This document shows positions 1 to 57,226 of a stretch of 64,000 bases of DNA, piece after piece (the first letter of the stretch is position 1; each line of letters opens with the position of its first letter). The stretch is from Octopus sinensis (lineage: Eukaryota). The notes beneath the pieces are model-generated. The model saw only the letters and a list, made by a program, of their open reading frames with translations. It was not told the DNA's origin and made no database searches. Location of the stretch: NCBI RefSeq assembly GCF_006345805.1, contig NC_043003.1, positions 63,364,001 through 63,428,000 on the forward strand, in the 5' to 3' direction. The position numbers and the translations under genes were made by a program.

Positions 1-1546
1 TGCAGTAATTCCTGATGGGCCTGGGGCTTTCCCTGTCTTCATGCTTCTAATTACCTTAGCTACCACGGAACTATCAACTCGGATAGCTGGTCCCTCTGTA
101 GGGTCAACATTCGGCAGACTCTTCTTTATCCCATTCATTTTCCTCATTCAGTAACCTTTCATAGTGGCGTCTCCAAGCTCTTCTCTTTGCATCCTCATTT
201 AGCGCAAGTGAACCATCCTCCATGCGAACACATTTCTCTCCTACCACATCACGATTCTCTCTCACACACTGTCTTGCAACACGAAATACCTCAAGTCTTT
301 CATCCTCACGGCGCAGGACATTGGCAAATTTTCTCTTATCTGCTTCCCCTCTGGCTAGATAGACCTGTCTCCTAGCTTCCCTTCTGGCAGTCTGATACCC
401 TTCCCTGCTACCACCGTTCTTCCAGGCCTTCCAAGCCTGTTTCTTTTGTCTAATAGCCCTGTCAACAATATTGTTCCACCACCACGTTATTTTGGGTCTT
501 AAGGGGACTTTGCACCAGCCACAGATCTGGTCAGCGGCTTTCAGCAGGTTGTCCCTCAGAAACGTCCAGTTGTCTTCTACCCCATGTGTAGCTATACCCC
601 CTTCCACTTCGTCAAAGGCTTCAAGTAACATATCTCTAAATCTCTGTCCATTCGCAGGGGCTTTAAGCTTCCAGACCCTTCTTCTCCATGTTGGTCGTCT
701 TCTAGTCGCCCTCTTAGTCCTGATCCTAAAGTCACTAACTACCAGTCTATGTTGTGGGGTGCATTCTTCGCCTGGGAAGGTTTTGGCATTTTTAAGCAGC
801 CATCTTTCCCTTTTTCTGGCAAGGATGTAGTCGATTTGGCTAGTATGCCGGCCCGATCGGTAGGTGACCAGGTGGCTTGTTGGTTTCCTGAAGTTAGTGT
901 TGCAGACCATAAGACTATTCGCATCGCAGAACTCCAGCAGCCTGGTTCCCTCCTCGTTGCGGGAACCATAACCGTAGCCTCCATGTACGCCATGGAAGCC
1001 CCCAGCATGTCGTCCAACATGCCCATTGAAATCACCAGCCACAAAGAGAAGGTCCCTGTCGTTCGTCGATGAGGTGGTCTGCAGTAGGGTGTCATAGAAA
1101 CTGTCTTTCTGTCCATCGGGTAGCCCTGGCTGAGGGGCATAGGCCGATATAATGGTTGCTAATCTATTATGAAGCACTATTCTAATCTTAAGTATTCTGT
1201 CACTTACTCTGATTACCTCAATTACTCTATCTATCCATTTCTCAGCGATAATTAATCCCACGCCACCAACCCCGTCAGTGTTCCCTGCCCAGAAAATCTT
1301 GTACCTGTGTCCCTTGCCTGTGAGGACCCTAGCAGATCCTCCTCTCCACCTTATTTCTTGCATACAACATACATCAACACGTCTCCGTTCAAGCATCTCG
1401 ACTATCTCGCCAGACCTACCTTTCAATGTGCCAACGTTGAGGGTGCCTACCCTGAGGGTGTGGGAGGTGTGGGCCTCTGAGACCCTGGGATGAGGGGCCG
1501 CAGTGTTCTGTACCTGAAAAGAAAGCTTGCATTTGCCAGATATCAT
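1..1546 (-). pseudogene. RTE-clade LINE ORF: APE endonuclease domain and start of RT region, frameshifted near nt 104-125 and continuing off the window
   Basis: The 480-aa ORF has APE motifs LRVGTLNVGTL, CMQEIRW, ISAYAPQ, AGDFNGHVG and SQIDYIL. Nt 1-103 read DPTEGPAIRVDSSVVAKVIRSMKTGKAPGPSGITA (RTE RT N-terminus) in a shifted frame. Confidence 0.92.
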
Positions 1547-5640: not shown

Positions 5641-5852
5641 TATGATGTTTTATAATAATAAAATTTTATTCCCACGTTTAAGATTAAATTTGAGCACATT
5701 AACGGAAGCAGTTTCAGACAAGGTGAATTTAAAAGGACCAAAAACTGAGATCAACAATGCCAACTGTTAAGTCAAGGAACAGAATGAATAATGTTCCCTA
5801 CCAAAAACTAATTTAATAATGATAATAATCCTTAAAATTCTAGGGGACTAGA

Positions 5853-6159
5853 TACCATTGGATACCATTTTATCTAGGAACTAAATTTAGTTCACTAGAA
5901 ACTAACTTTTCAGGTACTTCATCTATGTCTTCATCTATGTTTTTATTTAAGATTTCATTTTCATCCTTGCTGATTTTATGTATACCCGCATGTATTTAAG
6001 TATGCATACCTATATACAGGTGCAGAAGTAGCTGTGTGGTAAGAAGTTTGCTACTCAACCACATGGCTCCACATTCAGTCCCACTGCATGGCACATTGGG
6101 CTGGTGTCTTCTACTATAGTCTTGTGAGTGGTAGACGGAAAACGGGAGGAAGCCTGTCG

Positions 6160-6199
<40 letters not shown>

Positions 6200-6522
6200 A
6201 TATATATATATGTATACGACAGGCTTCCTCCCGTTTTCCGTCTACCACTCACAAGACTATAGTAGAAGACACCAGCCCAATGTGCCATGCAGTGGGACTG
6301 AATGTGGAGCCATGTGGTTGAGTAGCAAACTTCTTACCACACAGCTACTTCTGCACCTGTATATAGGTATGCATACTTAAATACATGCGGTATACATAAA
6401 ATCAGCAAGGATGAAAATGAAATCTAAATAAAAACATAGATGAAGACATAGATGAAGTACCTGAAAAGTTAGTTTCTAGTGAACTAAATTTAGTTCCTAG
6501 ATAAAATGGTATCCAAATGGTA
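5853..6522. repeat. Near-perfect ~670-bp palindrome centred on a (TA)n tract; each arm contains a SINE B head
   Basis: ORFs 6055-6288(-) and 6088-6321(+) are mirror copies. The arms differ mostly by 1-nt indels. Confidence 0.95.
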
Positions 6523-6528
6523 TATATA

Positions 6529-19465: not shown

Positions 19466-20421
19466 CATTTAGTATATGTCTGTATATGTATATGTATGTG
19501 TATATAATATATTGCCTGTTTATACATTATATTATTTTTATAATTTACTTCATCTTTACTTTTTAATTCTCACTTTAATTTTATCTTTCCTATGATATAT
19601 AATTTTCAAGATGGTGTAATTTAGTTGTTCATTTTGAACCGATAAAAGGTTTCTTTTTCAAATATTTCATGTATAAGCGTGTATATATATATAGTGGTAT
19701 AAATATCAACACAATGTTTTCCCCTTCCTCCCTTATTTTTCTTTTTCTTTTTTTGTCTCTCTCCCCTTCTCCAAACATACAGACACACACACACGCACAC
19801 ACACACGCACACACACACGCACACACACACACACACAAACACACACAGACACCTTCACAAAACGATCATAAAAAGTGGAAAGAATTCTTAAACCCAAAAA
19901 AGCATTTGACCATTCTCAATGATAAAAGGAAATATAATTTATGGCCTACCTCCCCGCCACCACACACTCAGTGACACTGTGAAGTGGTCAAAGCTGAAAT
20001 TCTTAGAACCCTCTTGGAGTCAATATTCTGTCCAGCAGACCAAAAAATTCTTTCCTACTTCTTCTCTCTCCCTTCCCCTCTTTCTCTTTAGCACTCACCT
20101 CAGGTACAAACACACACACACACAAACACATACACATACACATATACACATGTTCTCTCTCTCACTTTCTCCTCATCCACCTCACCCTCTTGTACTGTCT
20201 TATATTCCTCCCCACCACTACGAAATTCTATAAAATTATTAAAATTCCCCACAAAAGAAACTTATTTTAATTTGAAAACCCCACTAGAATGGGAGAAAGC
20301 GCTAATGATCTGGGTGATATGATATATATATAAAAGATGTAATATATAAATAAATATCTGTAAATATGAACCATCCAATCTTCTTATTACTTCATTTCTT
20401 CTAATATATATATATATTTAC

Positions 20422-20583
20422 TTTATTTAAAGCAGAAGGAAATTCAATAAAACCTGTTACTCTGAGTTTCACGTTCCCGTCGTCGGACAGTTTTTGCTAG
20501 ATTCTAGCAAAAACTGTCCGATGAACGGCAACGGGAAACTCAGAGTAACAGGTTTTGTTGAATTTTCTGCTGCTTTAAATAAA
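20422..20583. mobile_element. 162-bp palindromic element in (TA)n with an HHR-like motif on each strand
   Basis: The arms tttatttaaagcag...ctag/att/ctag...ctgctttaaataaa are inverted repeats. HHR-like motifs lie at 20454-20490(-) and 20514-20551(+). Confidence 0.75.
20514..20551 (+). ncRNA. Type I HHR-like motif, U4C variant (family B)
   Basis: CUGU-CCGAUGA-ACG-GCAA-CGG-GAAAC-UCAGA-GUA-ACAG. Confidence 0.5.
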
Positions 20584-20785
20584 GTGTGTGTATATATATA
20601 TATATATATAAATAATAAATAGGGAATAAATCCAAATTTACAGGGAAAAAATCAGATTTATGATTAAATCGATTTTATAGTAAAATATTATAAAATATTA
20701 TTCGAGACAAAACCACTATTTTGCAAAACAAACAAGGAAGACTAATTAATACATAAAATTTTAATAAATAGTCAAAAAAAAACCG

Positions 20786-20828
20786 CCACTACAATCGTTT
20801 CTTGTCTTGATCGACAATCTTCAGGTGG
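20786..20828 (-). ncRNA. Type I hammerhead ribozyme, intact core
   Basis: CCAC-CUGAAGA-UUGUC-GAUCAA-GACAA-GAAAC-GAUU-GUA-GUGG. Stems I, II and III all pair. Confidence 0.8.
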
Positions 20829-20882
20829 ACTTCCAATAATTCAGTGTCAAATTATGAAATTTGACACTGAATTATTGGAAGT

Positions 20883-20925
20883 CCACCTGAAGATTGTCGA
20901 TCAAGACAGAGAACGATTGTAGTGG
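20883..20925 (+). ncRNA. Mirror HHR copy with an altered GAAA (gacagagaac)
   Basis: CCAC-CUGAAGA-UUGUC-GAUCAA-GACAG-AGAAC-GAUU-GUA-GUGG. Probably impaired. Confidence 0.55.
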
Positions 20926-21084
20926 CGGTTTTTTTTACTATTTATTAAAATTTTATGTATTAATTAGTCTTTCTTGTTTGTTTTGCAAAATAGTGGTTTT
21001 GTCTCGAATAATATTTTATATATATATATATATATATATAATGATAAATATCAAAGTGAGTTATTACAGTAGCGGTAACACATC

Positions 21085-21428
21085 GTGACGTATATTTGCC
21101 ATCTCAATATGGCTACCCCTAAGGGTGGATGCTACTGTAGTTTTTAGCCCCAGGGGACACACTCCTCCAGCTGGCCATAGACACACTTTCTGTGTCCTGT
21201 CAGTATTTGCAAAGGGAAGTCATCCTTCCCCGTCTTCAACTTATGATACACACGGACTCGAGTTTCGAGGTATTGACCTCTCGTCAGCGTGTGACTTCCC
21301 TTTGCAAATACTGACAGGACACAGAAAGTGTGTCTATGGCCAGCTGGAGGGTGTGCCTCCTGGGGCTAAAAACTACAGTAGCATCCACCCTTAGGGGTAG
21401 CCATATTGAGATGGCAAATATACGTCAC
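21085..21428. mobile_element. 344-bp foldback element: ~137-bp near-perfect inverted arms around a 69-nt spacer containing an HHR
   Basis: Arms 21085-21222 and 21292-21428 (gtgacgtatatttgccatctcaatatggctacccc...). Confidence 0.9.
21249..21293 (-). ncRNA. Canonical type I hammerhead ribozyme
   Basis: CACACG-CUGACGA-GAGGU-CAAU-ACCUC-GAAAC-UCGA-GUC^CGUGUG: 6-bp stem I, 5-bp stem II with G10.1-C11.1, palindromic stem III ACUCGAGU, and a GUC site. Confidence 0.88.
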
Positions 21429-21463
<35 letters not shown>

Positions 21464-21476
21464 TACATACATACAT

Positions 21477-21515
<39 letters not shown>

Positions 21516-21616
21516 TATATATATAATATATATATATACATATATATACATACACATATATACATATATATAAATATATTATATATATACATATATATAT
21601 ACATACACATATATAC

Positions 21617-21688
<72 letters not shown>

Positions 21689-21972
21689 TATATATAATAT
21701 ATAACATTATATAAAATATATTGGAGGGCTGGCCGTGATCTAGTAATCTCAAGATTAATCAGCCGAAATTACTACGATGATCCGGTTCTTGACTGAAGAC
21801 TGAGGGGTTCGAATGTCCTGTCCATGTTTATTGTATCGTCTTCTAAGAGTTATACGTTTTGTCCATGTTGTATTTTTCTACATACCTTAATATATATATA
21901 TATATATATACATATACACACACACACATACATACATGCATATATCATTTGATGTACACAGTATACAGTTAT

Positions 21973-27305: not shown

Positions 27306-29039
27306 GCCTCTCCTTGATTTGATTTGAAAAATAAAAATTATTTGATTCTACGACTAATTAATCGATAGCCGGTATCAGTGCAGAAACTGCTCCTATCAAT
27401 CCTCTTCCTGGTTTCTACGGCTAACAGTTATGTTATTCTTTGTAGATTATCAGATATCCATCGCTCGGTTGGTTAGCGATAGAAAGCCCCTACATTCAGT
27501 AACATACCTTAGGACTGGCTCCCTTGTTTCAGTTTGAACCTTAGCGATTTGCTGTAGCCACTCTAAAAGTTGCTGAAGATGAATTCGGCTACATGTAACA
27601 GCTCGGTGTTATTCGACCTTCGTCTAGTAACTGGGATCTCCTCTACATATGGTATTGAAGAAGACCAAAAGTAATTAGTGTTCCTGTCCGGACTATATAG
27701 GCTGTTAAACGCTAAAATAGTGCCGAATAAATATCCTATTCTTCACCTCCCATGATCTCTTAATTTCTCTACATGGTACTACAAATTTTTCGAAGATAGA
27801 TTTAGTTCGTGCATATAACCAGGTTCCAACAGAATTCGTTGACATTCATAAGATGGCTATTACCACAGCATTTGAACTGTATGAATTCGTCAGGATGACT
27901 TTAGGGTCAGGAATTCTGTGAATTCCTTCGAAAAGTTTATCGATGAAGTTAATCGCAGTTTGAACTTTGTTTTTGCTTTCATTGATGATTTATTGTTTGC
28001 TAATGCTTCGGGATCTAAGCACGAGCAACATCTGATTCATATCTTTTCTAGATTATCACATTCCGTTGTTGTGATTAACCCTGTTAAATGTTGCCTTAGA
28101 GTTTCGTCTTTAAACTTTTTAGGGCTCATCAGTGACAACATTGCTATGCGACCAATGACTGAGAAAACAGATGCAGCTGTGCAGTTTGCAGCTCCCAACT
28201 CGTTATAAAAATTACATGGATTTCTTGATGAAGAGAATTTCTACTGACATTTTATTTCACACTGTGCTGAGACAGCTTACTCTTTAACTGAGTCGTTACG
28301 TAATCGAAAAAGGAAAAGCAAGAAAATTCTGTTAACAGCAGAAAAATTACAGTAAATTAAGGATATAAAAAGTGAAATTATCTATTAACAACTCAATTGA
28401 CCCCAGATGCACCCTCTCTCTTTTAGTGGGTGCTTCAGACGTTTGAATTGGTGATATTTTTAAGTAGTTTATTTAGAAATTGTTGGCAATCTCTGTCCTT
28501 TTCCTTGAAGCATTTGAAACCGGCCGGAGCTAGATATTATATTTTCGGTTGAGAATTATAATCCTCATACTTATCAGTTAAGCACTTCCATCATTTTCCA
28601 GAGGAAAGAAATTTTGTTATATATACCGACCATAAGCTATTAGCTTTTTCCTCTTTAGGCACTTTGATATTTAGTATCTCAGTTTACTGCCAATATTCGT
28701 TACATCAAGGGCTCTAATAACTACGCAGTTGATGTTTTATCTTGGGTTCATGTGAACTCTCTGCACTCTACAGACCCTATTGATTAAGTGAAATAACGAA
28801 GGACCAAGAAACGAAGGAAGAATTACTACAACAAAAGAATTCGGTATTATCTTCCTTAGAATTCCTGCCTTCACGAAATATATTTAGTGTAATGTCCTGT
28901 TGTGCCTGCTAAACATAGAAGCTCAGTTTTCCACAAATGATCTCTACCGAGCCTTGCAGCATCTGAGAGACTCAGTTTAGCTCATTTTATTTGGCCATAC
29001 ATGAACAGGAATGTAGGTCAATGAGCTAGAAATTGTATA

Positions 29040-40780: not shown

Positions 40781-41589
40781 TTATAACTTCCCGTGGAATA
40801 GGCTCCAGCGACAAATAGCAACTTTTGGTGCGCTCCTTTCTGAGTTTCTCGATTGGTATAAAATTAACACACGTGGCCAACTGGCTGTGTTTTAACTTTG
40901 TGACTCTTTCAAATTTTAAATTCCACCGACATTGTTTTGATCCATCGGCTCCAATATAGTCAACTTTGTTGATACTTTCATTTTCCTAATTCTGTTCCAG
41001 ACTGTTCTGGCCACCACATCATGCCTCATTGAATATAAAACATTCATTTGCTGTTAGCAAACGAATTTCCATGTATATAACGAACGTTCAGCGCATTACA
41101 AAATATTTAGGAAATAGCCAGGAAATATATACTAAATCTCTTACATCAGTACTGATGTATTGTTAAACAGGCATGTTGAGAAAGTCACAAACGATGGGCC
41201 CTCTGTCGTTAATGATGTAATGAGTGAACGACTGGCAGAAAATCAGTCTTTGCTAAAATAACATTTCCAGACATCATAACTTCCAGCCAATTTTACCAGT
41301 TAATGGGCATCCAGTCAAAAAAGACATCATTCACGGCTACTTTTAAAACTTATAGTTACACACTTTGTGAAAGAATATAGATGTTGGGTATCTGAACGAC
41401 ATTTTGGCCCATTGCCAATTGAGAAGTACAGCTCGGGAATGGCGAAAAACAAAAGGAAAAACTTGCCTACTTTAAAGTAAAACGAATTGTAATTTTTGTA
41501 CAGGAATTGTTAAGTGGTTGTAGTTAACAGAAAAGTTAGAAAGCTGAATAATTGAAAGGCGTTTAAAGTTCTATTAAAAACGATAACAA

Positions 41590-41610
41590 TGCTGCTGCTG
41601 CTGCAACTAT

Positions 41611-41652
<42 letters not shown>

Positions 41653-41729
41653 CACCTGCACTACTACTACCACCACCACCACCACCACTACTACTACTAC
41701 TACCACTACTACCACCACCACCACCACTA

Positions 41730-41772
<43 letters not shown>

Positions 41773-41939
41773 CACTACCACTACCACTACTACCACCACT
41801 ACTACTGCCACCACCACTACTACCTCCACTACTACTACCACCACTACTATTACCACCACCACCACCACTACCACCACCACCACCACCACCACCACCTCCA
41901 CCGCCACCACCACCACCACCACCACCACTACTACTACTT

Positions 41940-41974
<35 letters not shown>

Positions 41975-42035
41975 GATAATAATAATAATAATGCTGTTGC
42001 TGCTGCTGCCACTGATGATGATGATGATGATGACG
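41590..42035. repeat. (CTA)/(CCA)/(TAA)/(GAT) compound trinucleotide microsatellite
   Basis: Direct reading. It explains the poly-V and poly-L/P ORFs. Confidence 0.95.
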
Positions 42036-42330
42036 ATTTGGAAATCAGAAGACTGTGGTCATTGAAGAAAGTGAGTGTTATAGCTGTTTTGGTTGGAGCT
42101 TTGGGTTTTGTAAGTACCAAGCTCGCACTGTGGATTGAAAAGATAGGAGTAAAAGGGAAGATAGAGCATCTACAGCAAAAAGTGCTGCGTGGAACGGCAC
42201 GAATCCTTCGCAGAGTCTTCGAAATCTGAATGAAGAGCGTTATCTTAATCCGCTGGTTGTGGAAACCAGTCGCGTTGTTACATTCTCCAGCAAAGTTGCT
42301 GTGTTAAGCAAGATTTATAATAATAATAAT
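42035..42330 (+). mobile_element. 3' end of an R4/Dong-like non-LTR retrotransposon with a (TAA)n tail
   Basis: EIRRLWSLKKVSVIAVLVGALG...LQQKVLRGTARILRRVFEI*, followed by ttataataataataat. Confidence 0.75.
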
Positions 42331-48324: not shown

Positions 48325-48326
<2 letters not shown>

Positions 48327-48472
48327 GAGTAAGCACATACATGTGAAACAAGGTGGAAAAAAAGAGTACTCAAATACCAGAGGTAGAGAGTAATAACAAA
48401 ACTGTCCGACGAACGGGAACGTGAAACTCTGAGTAACAGCTTTTGTTATATTTCTGCTGCTTTTAAATAAAG
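48325..48472 (+). mobile_element. 148-bp (TA)n-embedded element with an HHR motif at 48402-48439 (family B)
   Basis: CUGU-CCGACGA-ACG-GGAA-CGU-GAAAC-UCUGA-GUA-ACAG. A near-identical copy lies at 51341-51488. Confidence 0.75.
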
Positions 48473-48479
48473 TATATAT

Positions 48480-51340: not shown

Positions 51341-51488
51341 CCGGAGTAAGCACATACATGTGAAACAAGGTGGAAAAAAAGAGTACTCAAATACCAGAGG
51401 TAGAGTAATAACAAAACTGTCCGACGAAAGGGAACGTGAAACTCTGAGTAACAGCTTTTGTTATATTTCTGCTGCTTTTAAATAAAGT
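51341..51488 (+). mobile_element. Second copy of the family B HHR element (motif 51417-51454)
   Basis: Nearly identical to 48325-48472, with one stem II mismatch. Confidence 0.75.
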
Positions 51489-51534
51489 ATATATATATAT
51501 ATATATTATATATATATATATACTTCGTCTAATC

Positions 51535-53415: not shown

Positions 53416-54257
53416 TTTATATATAAAAGAAAGGTTGTGTGTCTGTCTACTCCGATTTAGATTCCTAACTACTCCCACATTTTGCAATGCAGTTTAACCA
53501 AAACCGGGTATCTTATAGTCGTGATTCATATCGAGCCCTTCTGGGTATTAGCACGCGTCTACGATGAGTCTATGATTTTACAAATAATTTACCATCATTT
53601 TTTCCATTTTAATGCATATTTTTTTAAATAAAGGGAAGTAACTCTCAAACTTCACACCAATATGCGTGCTCATATGCGACGTAATATCACATCAGCAGCA
53701 TTTCTCACACCCTCCTTGCACTTGGCGAAGGCAAAATACCAGGGGATGAAAATGGTAATATTGCCATCAATTCCATTTGTACCATTGTTAAGACGCCTTC
53801 TGATCTCAAGATGCAGTGTTCCCAGATCTACAAGCTAATTATCAGAATATGGATTGGATTGGCAAAAAGGCTATACTGGCCCCGAGGAATAAAACTGTTC
53901 ACCATATTAATGATGAAATGCTAAAACTCATTCCTGGGGAAGTCTATGTATATCAGTCTATCGATACAACTCCTGACCCAGAGGACGTCATCAACTATCC
54001 AATAGAGGTACTCACTTCCTTTGAGCACCCCGGACTACCACCACACTTTCTCAAGCTTAAAGTTGGTGCCCCTATAATGCTCATCAGAAATTTGGTTCCC
54101 CCAAAACAATGCAATGGCACACATTTTATCGTTAAGTCCTTATCTCCCACCGTAAACTTATATCAATATTTGCCTGAATAATCATCATAATTCAGTGCAA
54201 TCATTAACAGTACTTTCAAGCAATTCAGCCCCGAGCAACGCCGGGCAATTCTGCTAG
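53416..54257 (+). mobile_element. Non-autonomous Helitron with a PIF1-helicase remnant
   Basis: 5' a|tttatatataaaag (TC-like start), 3' hairpin cccgagcaacgccggg followed by CTAG|t, and an internal helicase fragment. Confidence 0.8.
53701..54180 (+). pseudogene. Helitron PIF1-like helicase fragment
   Basis: AILAPRN, INDEML, GLPPHFLKLKVGAPIMLIRNL...CNGT. Confidence 0.9.
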
Positions 54258-55876: not shown

Positions 55877-56018
55877 ATATATATATATATATATATATTA
55901 TATTATATATATAATATATATGATCAAAATAAAAACATGATGCCAAGGATACATACATATATATATATGTATGTATGTATGTATATATATGTATGTATGT
56001 ATATACACATGCATATAT

Positions 56019-56357
56019 GGGTACAGGGCATAAAAAAAAACGTGGACAGAATGAGAAACGAAAACATAAATAACAAAAACATAGAAAACGAACTTTTTTC
56101 GAACAACGAAAAAACAAACAAACAGAGAAATGAGACATGCAACATTCCCTTCATCAGTTGTCCCCTGTTTTATCTACTCTGCGTTTCGAAAGATAAAGCA
56201 GGGGACAACTAATTGAAGGGAATGTCCTTTATGTTGCATGTTTCGCTTCTCTGTTTGTTTTATAGTTGTTCAAAAAAAGTTTGTTTTCTATGTTTTTGTT
56301 TTTTTTTATGTTCTCGTTTCTCATTCTGTCCACGTTTTTTTTTTATATCCTGTACCC
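56019..56357. mobile_element. ~340-bp palindromic element in (TA)n with an HHR remnant at the centre
   Basis: Arms gggtacagg...cccctgttttatct / agataaagcagggg...cctgtaccc. The minus-strand centre reads UUAUC-UUUC-GAAAC-GCAGA-GUA-GAUAA (catalytic CUGANGA missing). Confidence 0.75.
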
Positions 56358-57226
56358 TATAATATATTTAATCTAAGGTGTACCTGTTGAAAATGATTTT
56401 ACCTCGCGTGTAAAAGTTTTTTTACTTGCTAAACTAAAATCAGAAACCAATTGGTCCAAGAAATTAGTTCGTAAAATGTTTTTGTTTTTTCATTTCGTTC
56501 CTGTCGAATTTTATCCCCAATTTTGTGGTTATAGAACCTAGCTGTTCTTTCTAGCATGTTGATTCACATGAGTGGATTCCTTATGTGTTTAAATGCACAC
56601 TGTATTTTATGACTAATATATAGTCCTTGGACTAAATTTTTACTTGCTAGGCCACTGGAAATGAAAATTTCTATTAATTTCCATTTCCTTTTGATATGAT
56701 TAAATATTGTATACACACAGACACAGACACACACACCACACACCACACACACACACACACACACCACACACACACACACACCACACACACACACATATAT
56801 ATATAATATATATATATATTATATATATATATATATATGGTACAAAAACTCTTTAAACATATGTTACTCCCTCCATTCCATAATTTCTTTAGAATTCTCA
56901 AAAAGAAATGTCTTTCTATATTTCATTATTCTTATCTGTTATGTTTATATATCTATTATATTATACTATATACTCTATTATTTAAATATCTATATATTTA
57001 TTGTGTCCTTGCTTATTTTTAACCCTTATATATATTTTTATATTTCTATTTCTATATTCTGAATGTATTAATATATGTTTTAGACAATTCTATCATATTA
57101 AATCCATATATGTATACACCAATCGCAGTCTGCCTGAGTTGAACTTCTCTGTATCTCTGTACTTTTCTAGCGTCTCGGGTTTGACTCGAGCACTTCCATG
57201 CTTTCTATCCTTTTCTACTGAAAATT

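What the first reader, a model, noticed from the sequence alone, without database searches (positions are those of the whole stretch)
21085..21428. Canonical hammerhead ribozyme in the loop of a ~137-bp-arm foldback element (rod-like, retrozyme-like RNA)
Seen: near-perfect inverted arms (21085-21222 / 21292-21428) enclose a 69-nt spacer. On the minus strand the spacer reads CACACG-CUGACGA-GAGGU-CAAU-ACCUC-GAAAC-UCGA-GUC^CGUGUG, with all conserved HHR nucleotides, a GUC site (predicted cut between 21255 and 21254) and a palindromic stem III (ACUCGAGU). Established: minimal type I HHRs with short or palindromic helix III occur in Penelope-like element pseudo-LTRs and in tandem-repeat retrozymes, and can cleave as dimers. 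Inference: the element looks like a MITE but would be transcribed as a long dsRNA rod with a self-cleaving loop. It may be a non-autonomous PLE-mobilised RNA element, or an inverted pseudo-LTR pair, rather than a DNA transposon.
Basis: partly seen in the sequence, partly recalled or inferred. Interest (0 to 1): 0.88.

Follow-up and report, generated by a model that had tools for sequence, protein, structure and literature searches.

The report
Hammerhead ribozyme in a retroelement foldback
A real hammerhead ribozyme motif sits in the loop of a near-perfect 137-bp hairpin, but it is best read as an ordinary short Penelope-like/retrozyme-type insertion in a (TA)n microsatellite of an octopus-like genome, not as a new kind of self-cleaving rod RNA.

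Summary
The arms 21085-21222 and 21292-21428 differ by 2 mismatches and 1 indel. They enclose 69 nt holding a complete type I hammerhead on the minus strand (21293->21249, cut 21255|21254). It scores 32.2 bits on Rfam RF00163, just under the 34-bit cut-off. My own descriptor gives 2 hits against 0.005 expected.

Context decides the interpretation. The window looks octopod. The unit 21041-21428 (44 unique bp plus the foldback) interrupts a (TA)n tract and shows no readable target-site duplication. The neighbouring unit 20615-21020 has an unrelated sequence but the same architecture and its own hammerhead. A third palindrome (20420-20585) consists of two inverted 3' pieces of a 148-bp unit. That unit also occurs twice as a plain direct copy inside (TA)n.

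(TA)n targeting, an inverted 5'-truncated copy, a tail at one end and a dimer-type hammerhead together are the published signature of Penelope-like elements and their retrozyme derivatives.

Folding does not support a self-cleaving loop. The catalytic fold is 13.6 kcal/mol worse than the best fold in the hairpin loop, and only a dimer of two copies favours it.

No other copy of the element could be retrieved, so mobility, transcription and cleavage remain untested.

Verdict: new member of a known kind, moderate to low interest.

The parts
21017..21040 (.). (TA)12, left part of the interrupted microsatellite target
   Evidence: Tandem Repeats Finder; flank comparison
21041..21084 (-). 44 unique bp between (TA)12 and the foldback. 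Candidate 3' 'tail' extension of the minus-strand copy, present at this end only
   Evidence: Sequence. With it included, both flanks are (TA)n. The neighbouring unit has the same asymmetry (20615-20688). The assignment as a PLE tail is an inference from PMC8557442 and PMC11167929
21085..21222 (-). Left arm: 3' 138 nt of the longer (hammerhead-containing) minus-strand copy
21223..21248 (-). 26-nt linker between the hammerhead and the arm. It holds half of a small local hairpin, GGGAAG-GAUGA-CUUCCC, at the point where the inverted copy stops
   Evidence: Sequence; fold
21249..21293 (-). Type I hammerhead ribozyme motif. Helix I 6 bp, helix II 5 bp with loop CAAU, helix III 2 bp with loop UCGA (palindrome ACUCGAGU). 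GUC site, predicted cut between 21255 and 21254
   Evidence: Rfam RF00163, 32.2 bits, E 3.3e-6 and 1e-4; descriptor with shuffle control; dimer cofold
21292..21428 (+). Right arm: inverted, more severely 5'-truncated copy (137 nt) of the same 3' region. Its inner end overlaps the hammerhead's helix I by 2 nt (junction microhomology CA)
21429..21721 (.). (TA)n/(TACA)n microsatellite, right part of the target
20615..21020 (-). Neighbouring unit of unrelated sequence with the same architecture. It has 74 unique bp, then the palindrome 20689-20853/20858-21020. A full-core hammerhead lies on minus 20828->20786, and its mutated mirror on plus 20883-20927
   Evidence: Not detected by Rfam
20420..20585 (.). 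Third palindrome (3-nt centre), made of two inverted 3' 77-nt pieces of the 148-bp unit listed next. Its outer ends are that unit's 3' ends
48326..48474 (+). Direct, non-foldback copy of the 148-bp unit, inside (TA)n. It carries a hammerhead-like motif with C instead of U at core position 4
51344..51489 (+). Second direct copy of the 148-bp unit (98% identical, same ends), inside a different (TA)n with different outer flanks

Best explanation
The locus is a solitary, non-autonomous retro-insertion of the Penelope-like-element (PLE) / non-LTR-retrozyme kind in a (TA)n microsatellite of an octopus-like genome.

The inserted unit is 21041-21428. It holds one longer copy on the minus strand, made of hammerhead, 26-nt linker, 138 nt and a 44-nt 3' tail (about 253 nt). 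Joined head-to-head to it is a second, inverted copy of only the last 137 nt, without the tail. Both outer ends are element 3' ends.

This structure is what a PLE enzyme is expected to leave. It nicks AT-rich DNA on both strands and primes reverse transcription from both. It starts at either of two internal sites, so a tail appears at one end only. The two cDNAs are then joined in the middle, here at a 2-nt microhomology next to a small RNA hairpin.

On this reading the foldback is a DNA-level by-product of insertion. The hammerhead is a passenger from the parent RNA, where it would act as a dimer between neighbouring copies in tandem or multimeric transcripts. In this solitary copy it is probably inactive or only weakly active.

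Shown here: the anatomy, the statistical reality of the hammerhead motif, (TA)n on both sides, the missing target-site duplication, the parallel architecture next door, and a related family with both direct and foldback forms.

Inferred: PLE mobilisation, the tail assignment, two-strand priming, and dimer-only cleavage.
For: - Hammerhead: RF00163 at 32.2 bits, E 3.3e-6 and 1e-4, full-length model. The descriptor gives 2 hits against 0.005 expected.
- Dimer design: the monomer catalytic fold is -8.7 against an MFE of -14.5. The cofold of two copies gives a dimeric hammerhead with an 8-bp helix III at -33.9. This is the metazoan/PLE type described in PMC4209133.
- Target: the unit 21041-21428 lies between (TA)12 and (TA)~150. 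There is no duplication at the arm ends, and with the 44 bp included both flanks are (TA)n.
- Same architecture in an unrelated sequence next door. Unit 20615-21020 is 74 unique bp plus a palindrome, between (TA)12 and (TA)12. Its hammerhead reads from the centre towards the outer end, and the unique stretch is on the same side.
- Family A: the palindrome 20420-20585 equals two inverted 3' 77-nt pieces of a 148-bp unit. That unit also occurs as two direct copies with identical ends inside two different (TA)n tracts. So, at least for family A, the foldback form is optional and its outer ends are the element's 3' ends; for the finding and its neighbour this is inferred from hammerhead orientation.
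- Literature, PMC8557442: PLEs prefer (TA)n, often carry an adjacent inverted 5'-truncated copy, have a 30-40 bp tail at one end only, and carry hammerheads near their 3' ends.
- Literature, PMC11167929: a purified PLE protein cleaves and extends both strands at AT-rich sites, and its two internal start sites explain the tail.
- Literature, PMC4209133: paired hammerheads 100-700 bp apart on opposite strands are seen in Schistosoma.
- Literature, preprint 10.64898/2026.07.22.740005: solo retrozyme monomers exist and derive from PLE pseudo-LTRs.
- Host: the best named homologue of the window's LINE ORF is from Octopus bimaculoides, at 80% identity. Shared repeats with an O. bimaculoides locus are 80-87% identical. 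Penelope elements are recently active in O. vulgaris (PMC13282606).
Against: - No second copy of this particular element was found. There is none in the window, in one 20-kb O. bimaculoides locus, or in the viral, metagenome and prokaryote collections. There is none among predicted proteins spanning it.
- Family membership, variable 5' truncation and the tail are therefore untested for this element itself.
- No PLE open reading frame (RT plus GIY-YIG) was seen in the window. That search was only a partial motif check.
- No sequence homology to any PLE pseudo-LTR could be tested.
- The candidate tails are 44 and 74 bp, longer than the 30-40 bp cited.
- The hammerhead is 1.8 bits below Rfam's curated cut-off.
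- The neighbouring palindromes have 3-4 nt centres. These could equally come from snap-back self-priming or from DNA-level palindrome formation.
Confidence: 0.62

Rival explanations
1. It is a miniature inverted-repeat DNA transposon (MITE or foldback element) with 137-bp terminal inverted repeats. It picked up a hammerhead-bearing fragment in its centre and is moved by a DNA transposase.
For: The inverted arms are long and nearly perfect. The window holds other foldbacks, one of them MITE-like (56014-56361). TIR transposons and MITEs are abundant in Octopus (PMC13282606).
Against: There is no target-site duplication of 2-12 bp at the arm ends. The 44 unique bp on one side only are unexplained. 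The neighbouring unit of unrelated sequence has the same asymmetric layout and also carries a hammerhead oriented towards its outer end. A related family exists as plain direct copies without inverted repeats, which a TIR transposon could not mobilise.
Confidence: 0.12
2. One reading: the foldback is the functional form. The locus would be transcribed into a rod-like, viroid- or retrozyme-like RNA whose terminal loop self-cleaves, or which is copied from a ~253-nt circular retrozyme RNA. One full turn of such a circle would run from the tail end to the hammerhead's 5' edge.
For: The minus-strand copy begins within 2 nt of the hammerhead's 5' edge. With the tail it measures about 253 nt, inside the 170-400 nt range of metazoan retrozyme monomers (PMC7229834). 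The palindromic loop ACUCGAGU could let two such RNAs pair in trans.
Against: There is only one hammerhead and no tandem repeat, so no unit-length RNA can be excised from this locus. The catalytic fold is 13.6 kcal/mol worse than the best fold inside the hairpin loop. Retrozyme RNAs are imperfectly paired, not 98% complementary over 137 bp. No transcription evidence is available. A purified PLE did not need hammerhead cleavage for insertion (PMC11167929).
Confidence: 0.1
3. It arose by palindrome formation after insertion. An ordinary direct hammerhead-bearing repeat was later partly duplicated in inverted orientation, by replication template switching or hairpin/cruciform processing at the unstable (TA)n tract.
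For: (TA)n tracts are prone to hairpin formation. The window holds a 98% palindrome with (TA)n at its centre (5849-6526). The only differences between the arms sit at a local quasi-palindrome, a hallmark of template switching. The inverted copy ends at a small hairpin.
Against: Three different sequence families within 1 kb all show the same outcome, with element 3' ends outward. The duplication stops exactly at the element's 3' end on the right side and does not visibly include unique flank. The arrangement is the one described as typical for PLE insertions (PMC8557442).
Confidence: 0.12
4. It is a chance resemblance: the hammerhead-like string is a coincidence inside an unrelated hairpin.
For: The Rfam score is below the gathering cut-off. 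The whole-window E-value scan did not list it, owing to filters.
Against: E is 3.3e-6 and 1e-4 with a full-length model match. The descriptor expectation is 0.005 per window against 2 observed. All conserved core positions, three helices and the dimer-type palindromic helix III are present.
Confidence: 0.02

Closest known systems
Penelope-like element (PLE) insertions with a pseudo-LTR hammerhead, an adjacent inverted 5'-truncated copy and a one-sided tail (PMC8557442, PMC4209133, PMC11167929)
   Same: (TA)n/AT-rich target with no readable target-site duplication. Head-to-head inverted copies with the 3' ends outward. A unique extension at one end only. A type I hammerhead with a short palindromic helix III (dimer type). 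Paired hammerheads on opposite strands in the neighbouring unit.
   Different: No RT/GIY-YIG reading frame. The whole unit is only 388 bp. The candidate tail is 44 bp, against the cited 30-40 bp. Only one of the two copies reaches the hammerhead, so it ends up in the hairpin loop. Homology to a PLE pseudo-LTR is untested.
Metazoan non-LTR retrozymes, i.e. tandem repeats with type I hammerheads expressed as circular RNAs, and their solo monomers (PMC7229834; preprint 10.64898/2026.07.22.740005)
   Same: Type I hammerhead of the canonical metazoan design (helix I 6 bp, short palindromic helix III). The unit size of about 210-253 nt lies within the 170-400 nt range. Low GC. Non-coding. Solo monomers are known, and retrozymes are proposed to be PLE derivatives.
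   Different: There is no tandem repeat here, which is the defining arrangement. An inverted partial copy gives a near-perfect 137-bp hairpin, which is not described for retrozymes. Circular RNA is untested.
MITEs and foldback DNA transposons
   Same: Small, non-coding, with long terminal inverted repeats and a hairpin-forming transcript.
   Different: No target-site duplication. An asymmetric 44-bp extension. A related family in the same window exists as direct copies without inverted repeats. Carries a ribozyme typical of retroelements.
Rfam RF00163, Hammerhead_1
   Same: Full-length match to the model (1-45), with all core nucleotides, a GUC site and type I topology.
   Different: 32.2 bits, 1.8 below the gathering score of 34. 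Rfam draws helix III as 4 bp with no loop. In a monomer it can only be 2 bp with a 4-nt loop.

Membership tests
Hammerhead ribozyme, type I (RF00163) | Conserved catalytic core (C3 U4 G5 A6 N7 G8 A9, G12 A13 A14, A15.1-U16.1, H17) | tested here: met
   The sequence reads CUGACGA ... GAAA ... GUC
Hammerhead ribozyme, type I (RF00163) | Three helices around the core, with helix I open (type I topology) | tested here: met
   Helix I 6 bp and open, helix II 5 bp and closed, helix III 2 bp with a 4-nt loop
Hammerhead ribozyme, type I (RF00163) | Score at or above Rfam's gathering cut-off (34 bits) | tested here: not met
   32.2 bits. E-values of 3.3e-6 (501 nt) and 1e-4 (16 kb) are still significant
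Hammerhead ribozyme, type I (RF00163) | Site-specific self-cleavage | not testable with these tools
   Folding suggests the monomer is disfavoured and the dimer favoured. An in vitro transcription assay is needed
Hammerhead ribozyme, type I (RF00163) | Covariation in the helices across homologous copies | not testable with these tools
   No other copy of this element could be retrieved
Penelope-like element insertion (non-autonomous or truncated) | Insertion into (TA)n or AT-rich DNA | tested here: met
   The unit 21041-21428 lies between (TA)12 and (TA)~150
Penelope-like element insertion (non-autonomous or truncated) | Inverted 5'-truncated copy next to a longer copy, with the 3' ends outward | tested here: met
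   The arm geometry and hammerhead orientation fit. The logic is confirmed for family A, where direct copies define the 3' end
Penelope-like element insertion (non-autonomous or truncated) | Tail of 30-40 bp present at one end only | tested here: inconclusive
   44 unique bp on the left only (74 bp in the neighbouring unit). Whether they belong to the element needs other copies
Penelope-like element insertion (non-autonomous or truncated) | Hammerhead motif in the terminal repeat or 3' region | tested here: met
Penelope-like element insertion (non-autonomous or truncated) | RT plus GIY-YIG reading frame, or sequence homology to the pseudo-LTR of such an element in the same genome | not testable with these tools
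   There is no such frame in the unit. A partial motif check of the window found none. The source genome is not searchable by DNA here
Metazoan non-LTR retrozyme | Tandem repeats (at least 2 units), each with a type I hammerhead | tested here: not met
   A single hammerhead of this family and no tandem copy in the window. It could only be a solo monomer
Metazoan non-LTR retrozyme | Expression as linear and circular unit-length RNA | not testable with these tools
   No transcriptome data available
MITE / foldback DNA transposon | Terminal inverted repeats | tested here: met
MITE / foldback DNA transposon | Target-site duplication of fixed length flanking the inverted repeats | tested here: not met
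   No match for k = 2-12 at the arm ends. Uninformative if the 44 bp are included, because both flanks are then (TA)n

The most novel reading that the evidence does not exclude
This genome may hold a distinct sub-class of hammerhead-bearing PLE/retrozyme derivatives whose normal genomic form is a near-perfect hairpin. Such units would be made at insertion by two-strand or snap-back priming from a ~250-nt circular or tandem RNA. Their transcripts would be long perfect dsRNAs, substrates for ADAR editing or small-RNA pathways in a cephalopod. The hammerhead loops would pair in trans through the palindrome ACUCGAGU to cleave. Three such units of unrelated sequence within 1 kb would then be examples of a rule, not an accident.
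Probability: 0.07. Interest if true: 0.6.

Novelty: new member of a known kind. Interest (0 to 1): 0.35.

Why it matters
The locus adds a clean, young example to a known picture. The arms are identical except for one mutational cluster. Hammerhead ribozymes in animal genomes ride on Penelope-like elements and their short non-autonomous derivatives, and these elements target (TA)n and leave inverted, truncated copies.

Two details are useful to specialists. First, the junction of the two copies is readable to the base: a 2-nt microhomology, at the 5' edge of the hammerhead and beside a small hairpin. Second, three unrelated families side by side share the architecture, one of them with matching direct copies. 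Together they give natural substrates for testing how PLE enzymes build inverted structures, and whether the hammerhead does anything in solitary copies.

The literature search here found no paper that treats hammerheads or retrozymes in cephalopods. A genome-wide census in Octopus would therefore be new data, but not a new principle.

Tried and rejected
- Rfam at gathering threshold on the whole window: nothing. The whole-window E-value scan did not list the hammerhead because of filters and a flood of (TA)n 'miRNA' hits. Scans of 501 nt and 16 kb did list it. No other Rfam hammerhead lies in the window at E <= 0.02 (1-32 kb) or E <= 0.005 (32-64 kb).
- Other copies of the element: none in the window or in a 20.8-kb O. 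bimaculoides locus. None in viral contigs, metagenome contigs with a hammerhead pattern and an arm pattern, or genome contigs. No paper holds the sequence.
- Trick search with the 101-aa pseudo-ORF that spans the foldback, hoping for spurious gene calls on other copies: no hits.
- Exact look-up of the window's LINE ORF: not on record.
- Pif1 fragment search to get more same-species loci: only 5 distant hits, the best named one a cuttlefish.
- MAFFT alignment of the hammerhead motifs was structurally wrong, so I built no custom covariance model.
- Six-frame Pfam annotation of the whole window was abandoned as too costly. A motif grep found only a non-PLE RT fragment.
- tRNA scan: none, so there is no support for a tRNA-derived SINE.
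- Supplements of two papers held no repeat libraries.
- Considered and rejected: Helitron/Helentron-derived element (no matching 5'-TC/CTRR-3' termini, no 3' hairpin logic, and a ribozyme present).
- Considered and rejected: LINE twin-priming inversion, which inverts an upstream segment rather than duplicating the 3' end.
- Considered and rejected: a heterodimer between the two neighbouring hammerheads, since their helix III sequences are not complementary.

Full report
**Observation.** The arms 21085-21222 and 21292-21428 are reverse complements with 2 mismatches and 1 single-base indel, all clustered at 21155-21163. The 344-nt minus-strand RNA folds into one long hairpin at -294.5 kcal/mol, with z = -34 against shuffles.

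The 69-nt spacer holds, on the minus strand (21293->21249), CACACG CUGACGA GAGGU CAAU ACCUC GAAAC UCGA GUC CGUGUG. Every conserved hammerhead core position is present. Helix I is open (type I). The cleavage base C17 is 21255, so the predicted cut lies between 21255 and 21254.

Rfam's Hammerhead_1 model (RF00163) matches over its full length at 32.2 bits. E is 3.3e-6 in a 501-nt search and 1e-4 in a 16-kb search. The score is 1.8 bits under the curated cut-off of 34, so the default scan is silent.

A descriptor of my own found 2 hits in the window, against a mean of 0.005 per dinucleotide-preserving shuffle; 1 of 200 shuffles gave any hit. The motif is real.

**Does the loop self-cleave?** Folding argues against a self-sufficient ribozyme.
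- Alone, the 45-nt motif prefers a non-catalytic fold (-14.5 kcal/mol) over the hammerhead fold (-8.7).
- Inside the hairpin loop, forcing the hammerhead fold costs 13.6 kcal/mol (-21.4 against -35.0).
- Two copies together fold into the classical dimeric hammerhead, with an 8-bp intermolecular helix III made from the palindrome ACUCGAGU, at -33.9.

This is the design described for metazoan and PLE hammerheads, which cleave poorly or not at all as monomers (PMC4209133, PMC7229834). One hammerhead also cannot release a unit-length RNA.

**Host and surroundings.** The window is AT-rich and full of (TA)n and (TACA)n. It carries a LINE endonuclease ORF and a Helitron Pif1 fragment. The best named relative of the LINE ORF is from Octopus bimaculoides, at 80% identity. 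Interspersed repeats are shared at 80-87% with an O. bimaculoides locus. The source is therefore probably an octopod. Penelope elements are reported as recently active in O. vulgaris (PMC13282606).

**The decisive context.** The foldback is one of three within about 1 kb, all tied to (TA)n.

(a) *The finding.* There is no target-site duplication of 2-12 bp at the arm ends. If the 44 unique bp on the left (21041-21084) are counted in, the unit 21041-21428 sits between (TA)12 and (TA)~150.

(b) *The neighbouring unit, 20615-21020.* Its sequence is unrelated but its layout is the same. It has 74 unique bp on the left, then a palindrome 20689-20853/20858-21020 with a 4-nt centre, between (TA)12 and (TA)12.
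- It holds the second descriptor hit, on minus 20828->20786: CCAC CUGAAGA UUGUC GAUCAA GACAA GAAAC GAUU GUA GUGG.
- This hit also has a near-palindromic helix III and a favoured dimer fold.
- Its mirror image in the other arm has a broken core.
- Rfam does not detect this motif, probably because the first pair of helix II is U-A.

(c) *The palindrome 20420-20585.* It has a 3-nt centre and consists of two inverted copies of the last 77 nt of a 148-bp unit.
- That unit also occurs twice as a plain direct copy with identical 5' and 3' ends (48326-48474 and 51344-51489, 98% identical).
- Each direct copy lies inside a different (TA)n tract with different outer flanks.
- This family carries a hammerhead-like motif with C instead of U at core position 4.

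Point (c) shows directly that, for at least one family here, the foldback is an optional insertion form and its outer ends are the element's 3' ends. In the finding and in (b), the hammerheads read from the centre towards an outer end, as that logic requires.

**Mechanism.** These features together are the published signature of Penelope-like elements:
- a preference for (TA)n;
- frequent 5' truncation;
- an inverted 5'-truncated copy placed next to the main copy;
- a 30-40 bp tail at one end only;
- a hammerhead near the 3' end (PMC8557442).

A purified PLE protein cleaves and extends both DNA strands at AT-rich sites. It starts reverse transcription at two internal sites, and the interval between them is the tail. 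It does not need hammerhead cleavage for insertion (PMC11167929). Paired hammerheads 100-700 bp apart on opposite strands were already noted in Schistosoma (PMC4209133). Solo retrozyme monomers, and the derivation of animal retrozymes from PLE terminal repeats, are described in a 2026 preprint.

My reading is as follows.
- One cDNA, primed at the distal start site, copied the tail, 138 nt, the linker and the hammerhead.
- A second cDNA, primed from the other strand at the proximal start site, copied 137 nt and stopped at the small hairpin GGGAAG-GAUGA-CUUCCC.
- The two were joined at a CA microhomology at the hammerhead's 5' edge.

The foldback is then a by-product of insertion, and the hammerhead a passenger. 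The anatomy is shown here. The enzyme, the tail assignment and the priming scheme are inferred.

**Rivals.**
- *A MITE* fits the long inverted repeats. It does not fit the missing duplication, the one-sided extension, the parallel neighbour or the direct-copy family.
- *A functional rod RNA or circular-RNA template* is not excluded. The longer copy plus the tail is about 253 nt and begins at the hammerhead's edge, as one turn of a circle would. But the locus has one hammerhead and no tandem repeat, and the fold disfavours catalysis.
- *Post-insertion palindrome formation* at unstable (TA)n is possible. The window has a 98% palindrome centred on (TA)n at 5849-6526, and the arm differences sit at a quasi-palindrome. 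It does not explain why three families end with their 3' ends outward.
- *Snap-back self-priming* is a variant of the retro-insertion model that I cannot separate from two-strand priming.

**Limits.** I could not retrieve any other copy of this element. Covariation, copy-number structure, homology to a PLE terminal repeat, transcription and cleavage are therefore all untested.

**Verdict.** A retroelement/PLE origin is supported; a self-cleaving rod is not. This is a new member of a known kind, with interest of about 0.35.

Noticed in passing
window 20615-21020: A second unit with the same layout as the finding but unrelated sequence. It has 74 unique bp plus a 95-98% palindrome with a 4-nt centre, between two (TA)12 tracts. 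A full-core hammerhead lies on minus 20828->20786 (U-A as the first pair of helix II, site GUA, near-palindromic helix III). Rfam misses it. The mirror copy on plus 20883-20927 has a broken core.
   Followed up: yes
window 20420-20585, 48326-48474, 51344-51489: A 148-bp non-coding unit with fixed ends, inserted in (TA)n as two direct copies and as one palindrome of its 3' 77 nt. It carries a hammerhead-like motif, CUGU CCGACGA ACGGGAACGU GAAAC UCUGA GUA ACAG, with C at core position 4. Whether this variant cleaves is unknown.
   Followed up: partly
window 5849-6526: A 682-bp, 98% palindrome with a (TA)n tract at its centre (about 6160-6215). Its arms contain SINE-like sequence, and its right end abuts another (TA)n. 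The arrangement is the reverse of the other foldbacks (microsatellite inside). The origin was not worked out.
   Followed up: no
window 56014-56361: An older (79%) foldback of about 350 bp with GGGTACAGGG... termini in AT-rich flanks. It is MITE-like and has no hammerhead motif.
   Followed up: no
window 104-1546 (-), 53816-54181 (+), 27885-28205 (+): Transposon protein remnants. A LINE AP-endonuclease ORF has its best named hit in Octopus bimaculoides (80%). A Helitron-type Pif1 2B-domain fragment has its best named hit in the cuttlefish Acanthosepion pharaonis (59%). There is also an RT-like fragment with FIDD. Together they point to a cephalopod, probably octopod, source.
   Followed up: partly
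window 21155-21163: The only differences between the two arms of the finding (G/A, A/G and one T indel) cluster within 9 nt at a local quasi-palindrome, GGAGG-CACAC-CCTCC. This suggests one template-switch-type event rather than independent substitutions, so the foldback is very young or homogenised.
   Followed up: partly
window 41563-42120: A long codon-like repeat tract, reading poly-Val on one strand and Leu/Pro runs on the other, inside spurious ORFs. It is a low-complexity trinucleotide repeat.
   Followed up: no
whole window: The (TA)n and (TACA)n tracts give dozens of sub-threshold Rfam 'miRNA' matches (mir-297, mir-3149, mir-1277, mir-5014 and others). These are compositional artefacts, and they crowd real weak hits out of whole-window E-value listings.
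   Followed up: yes
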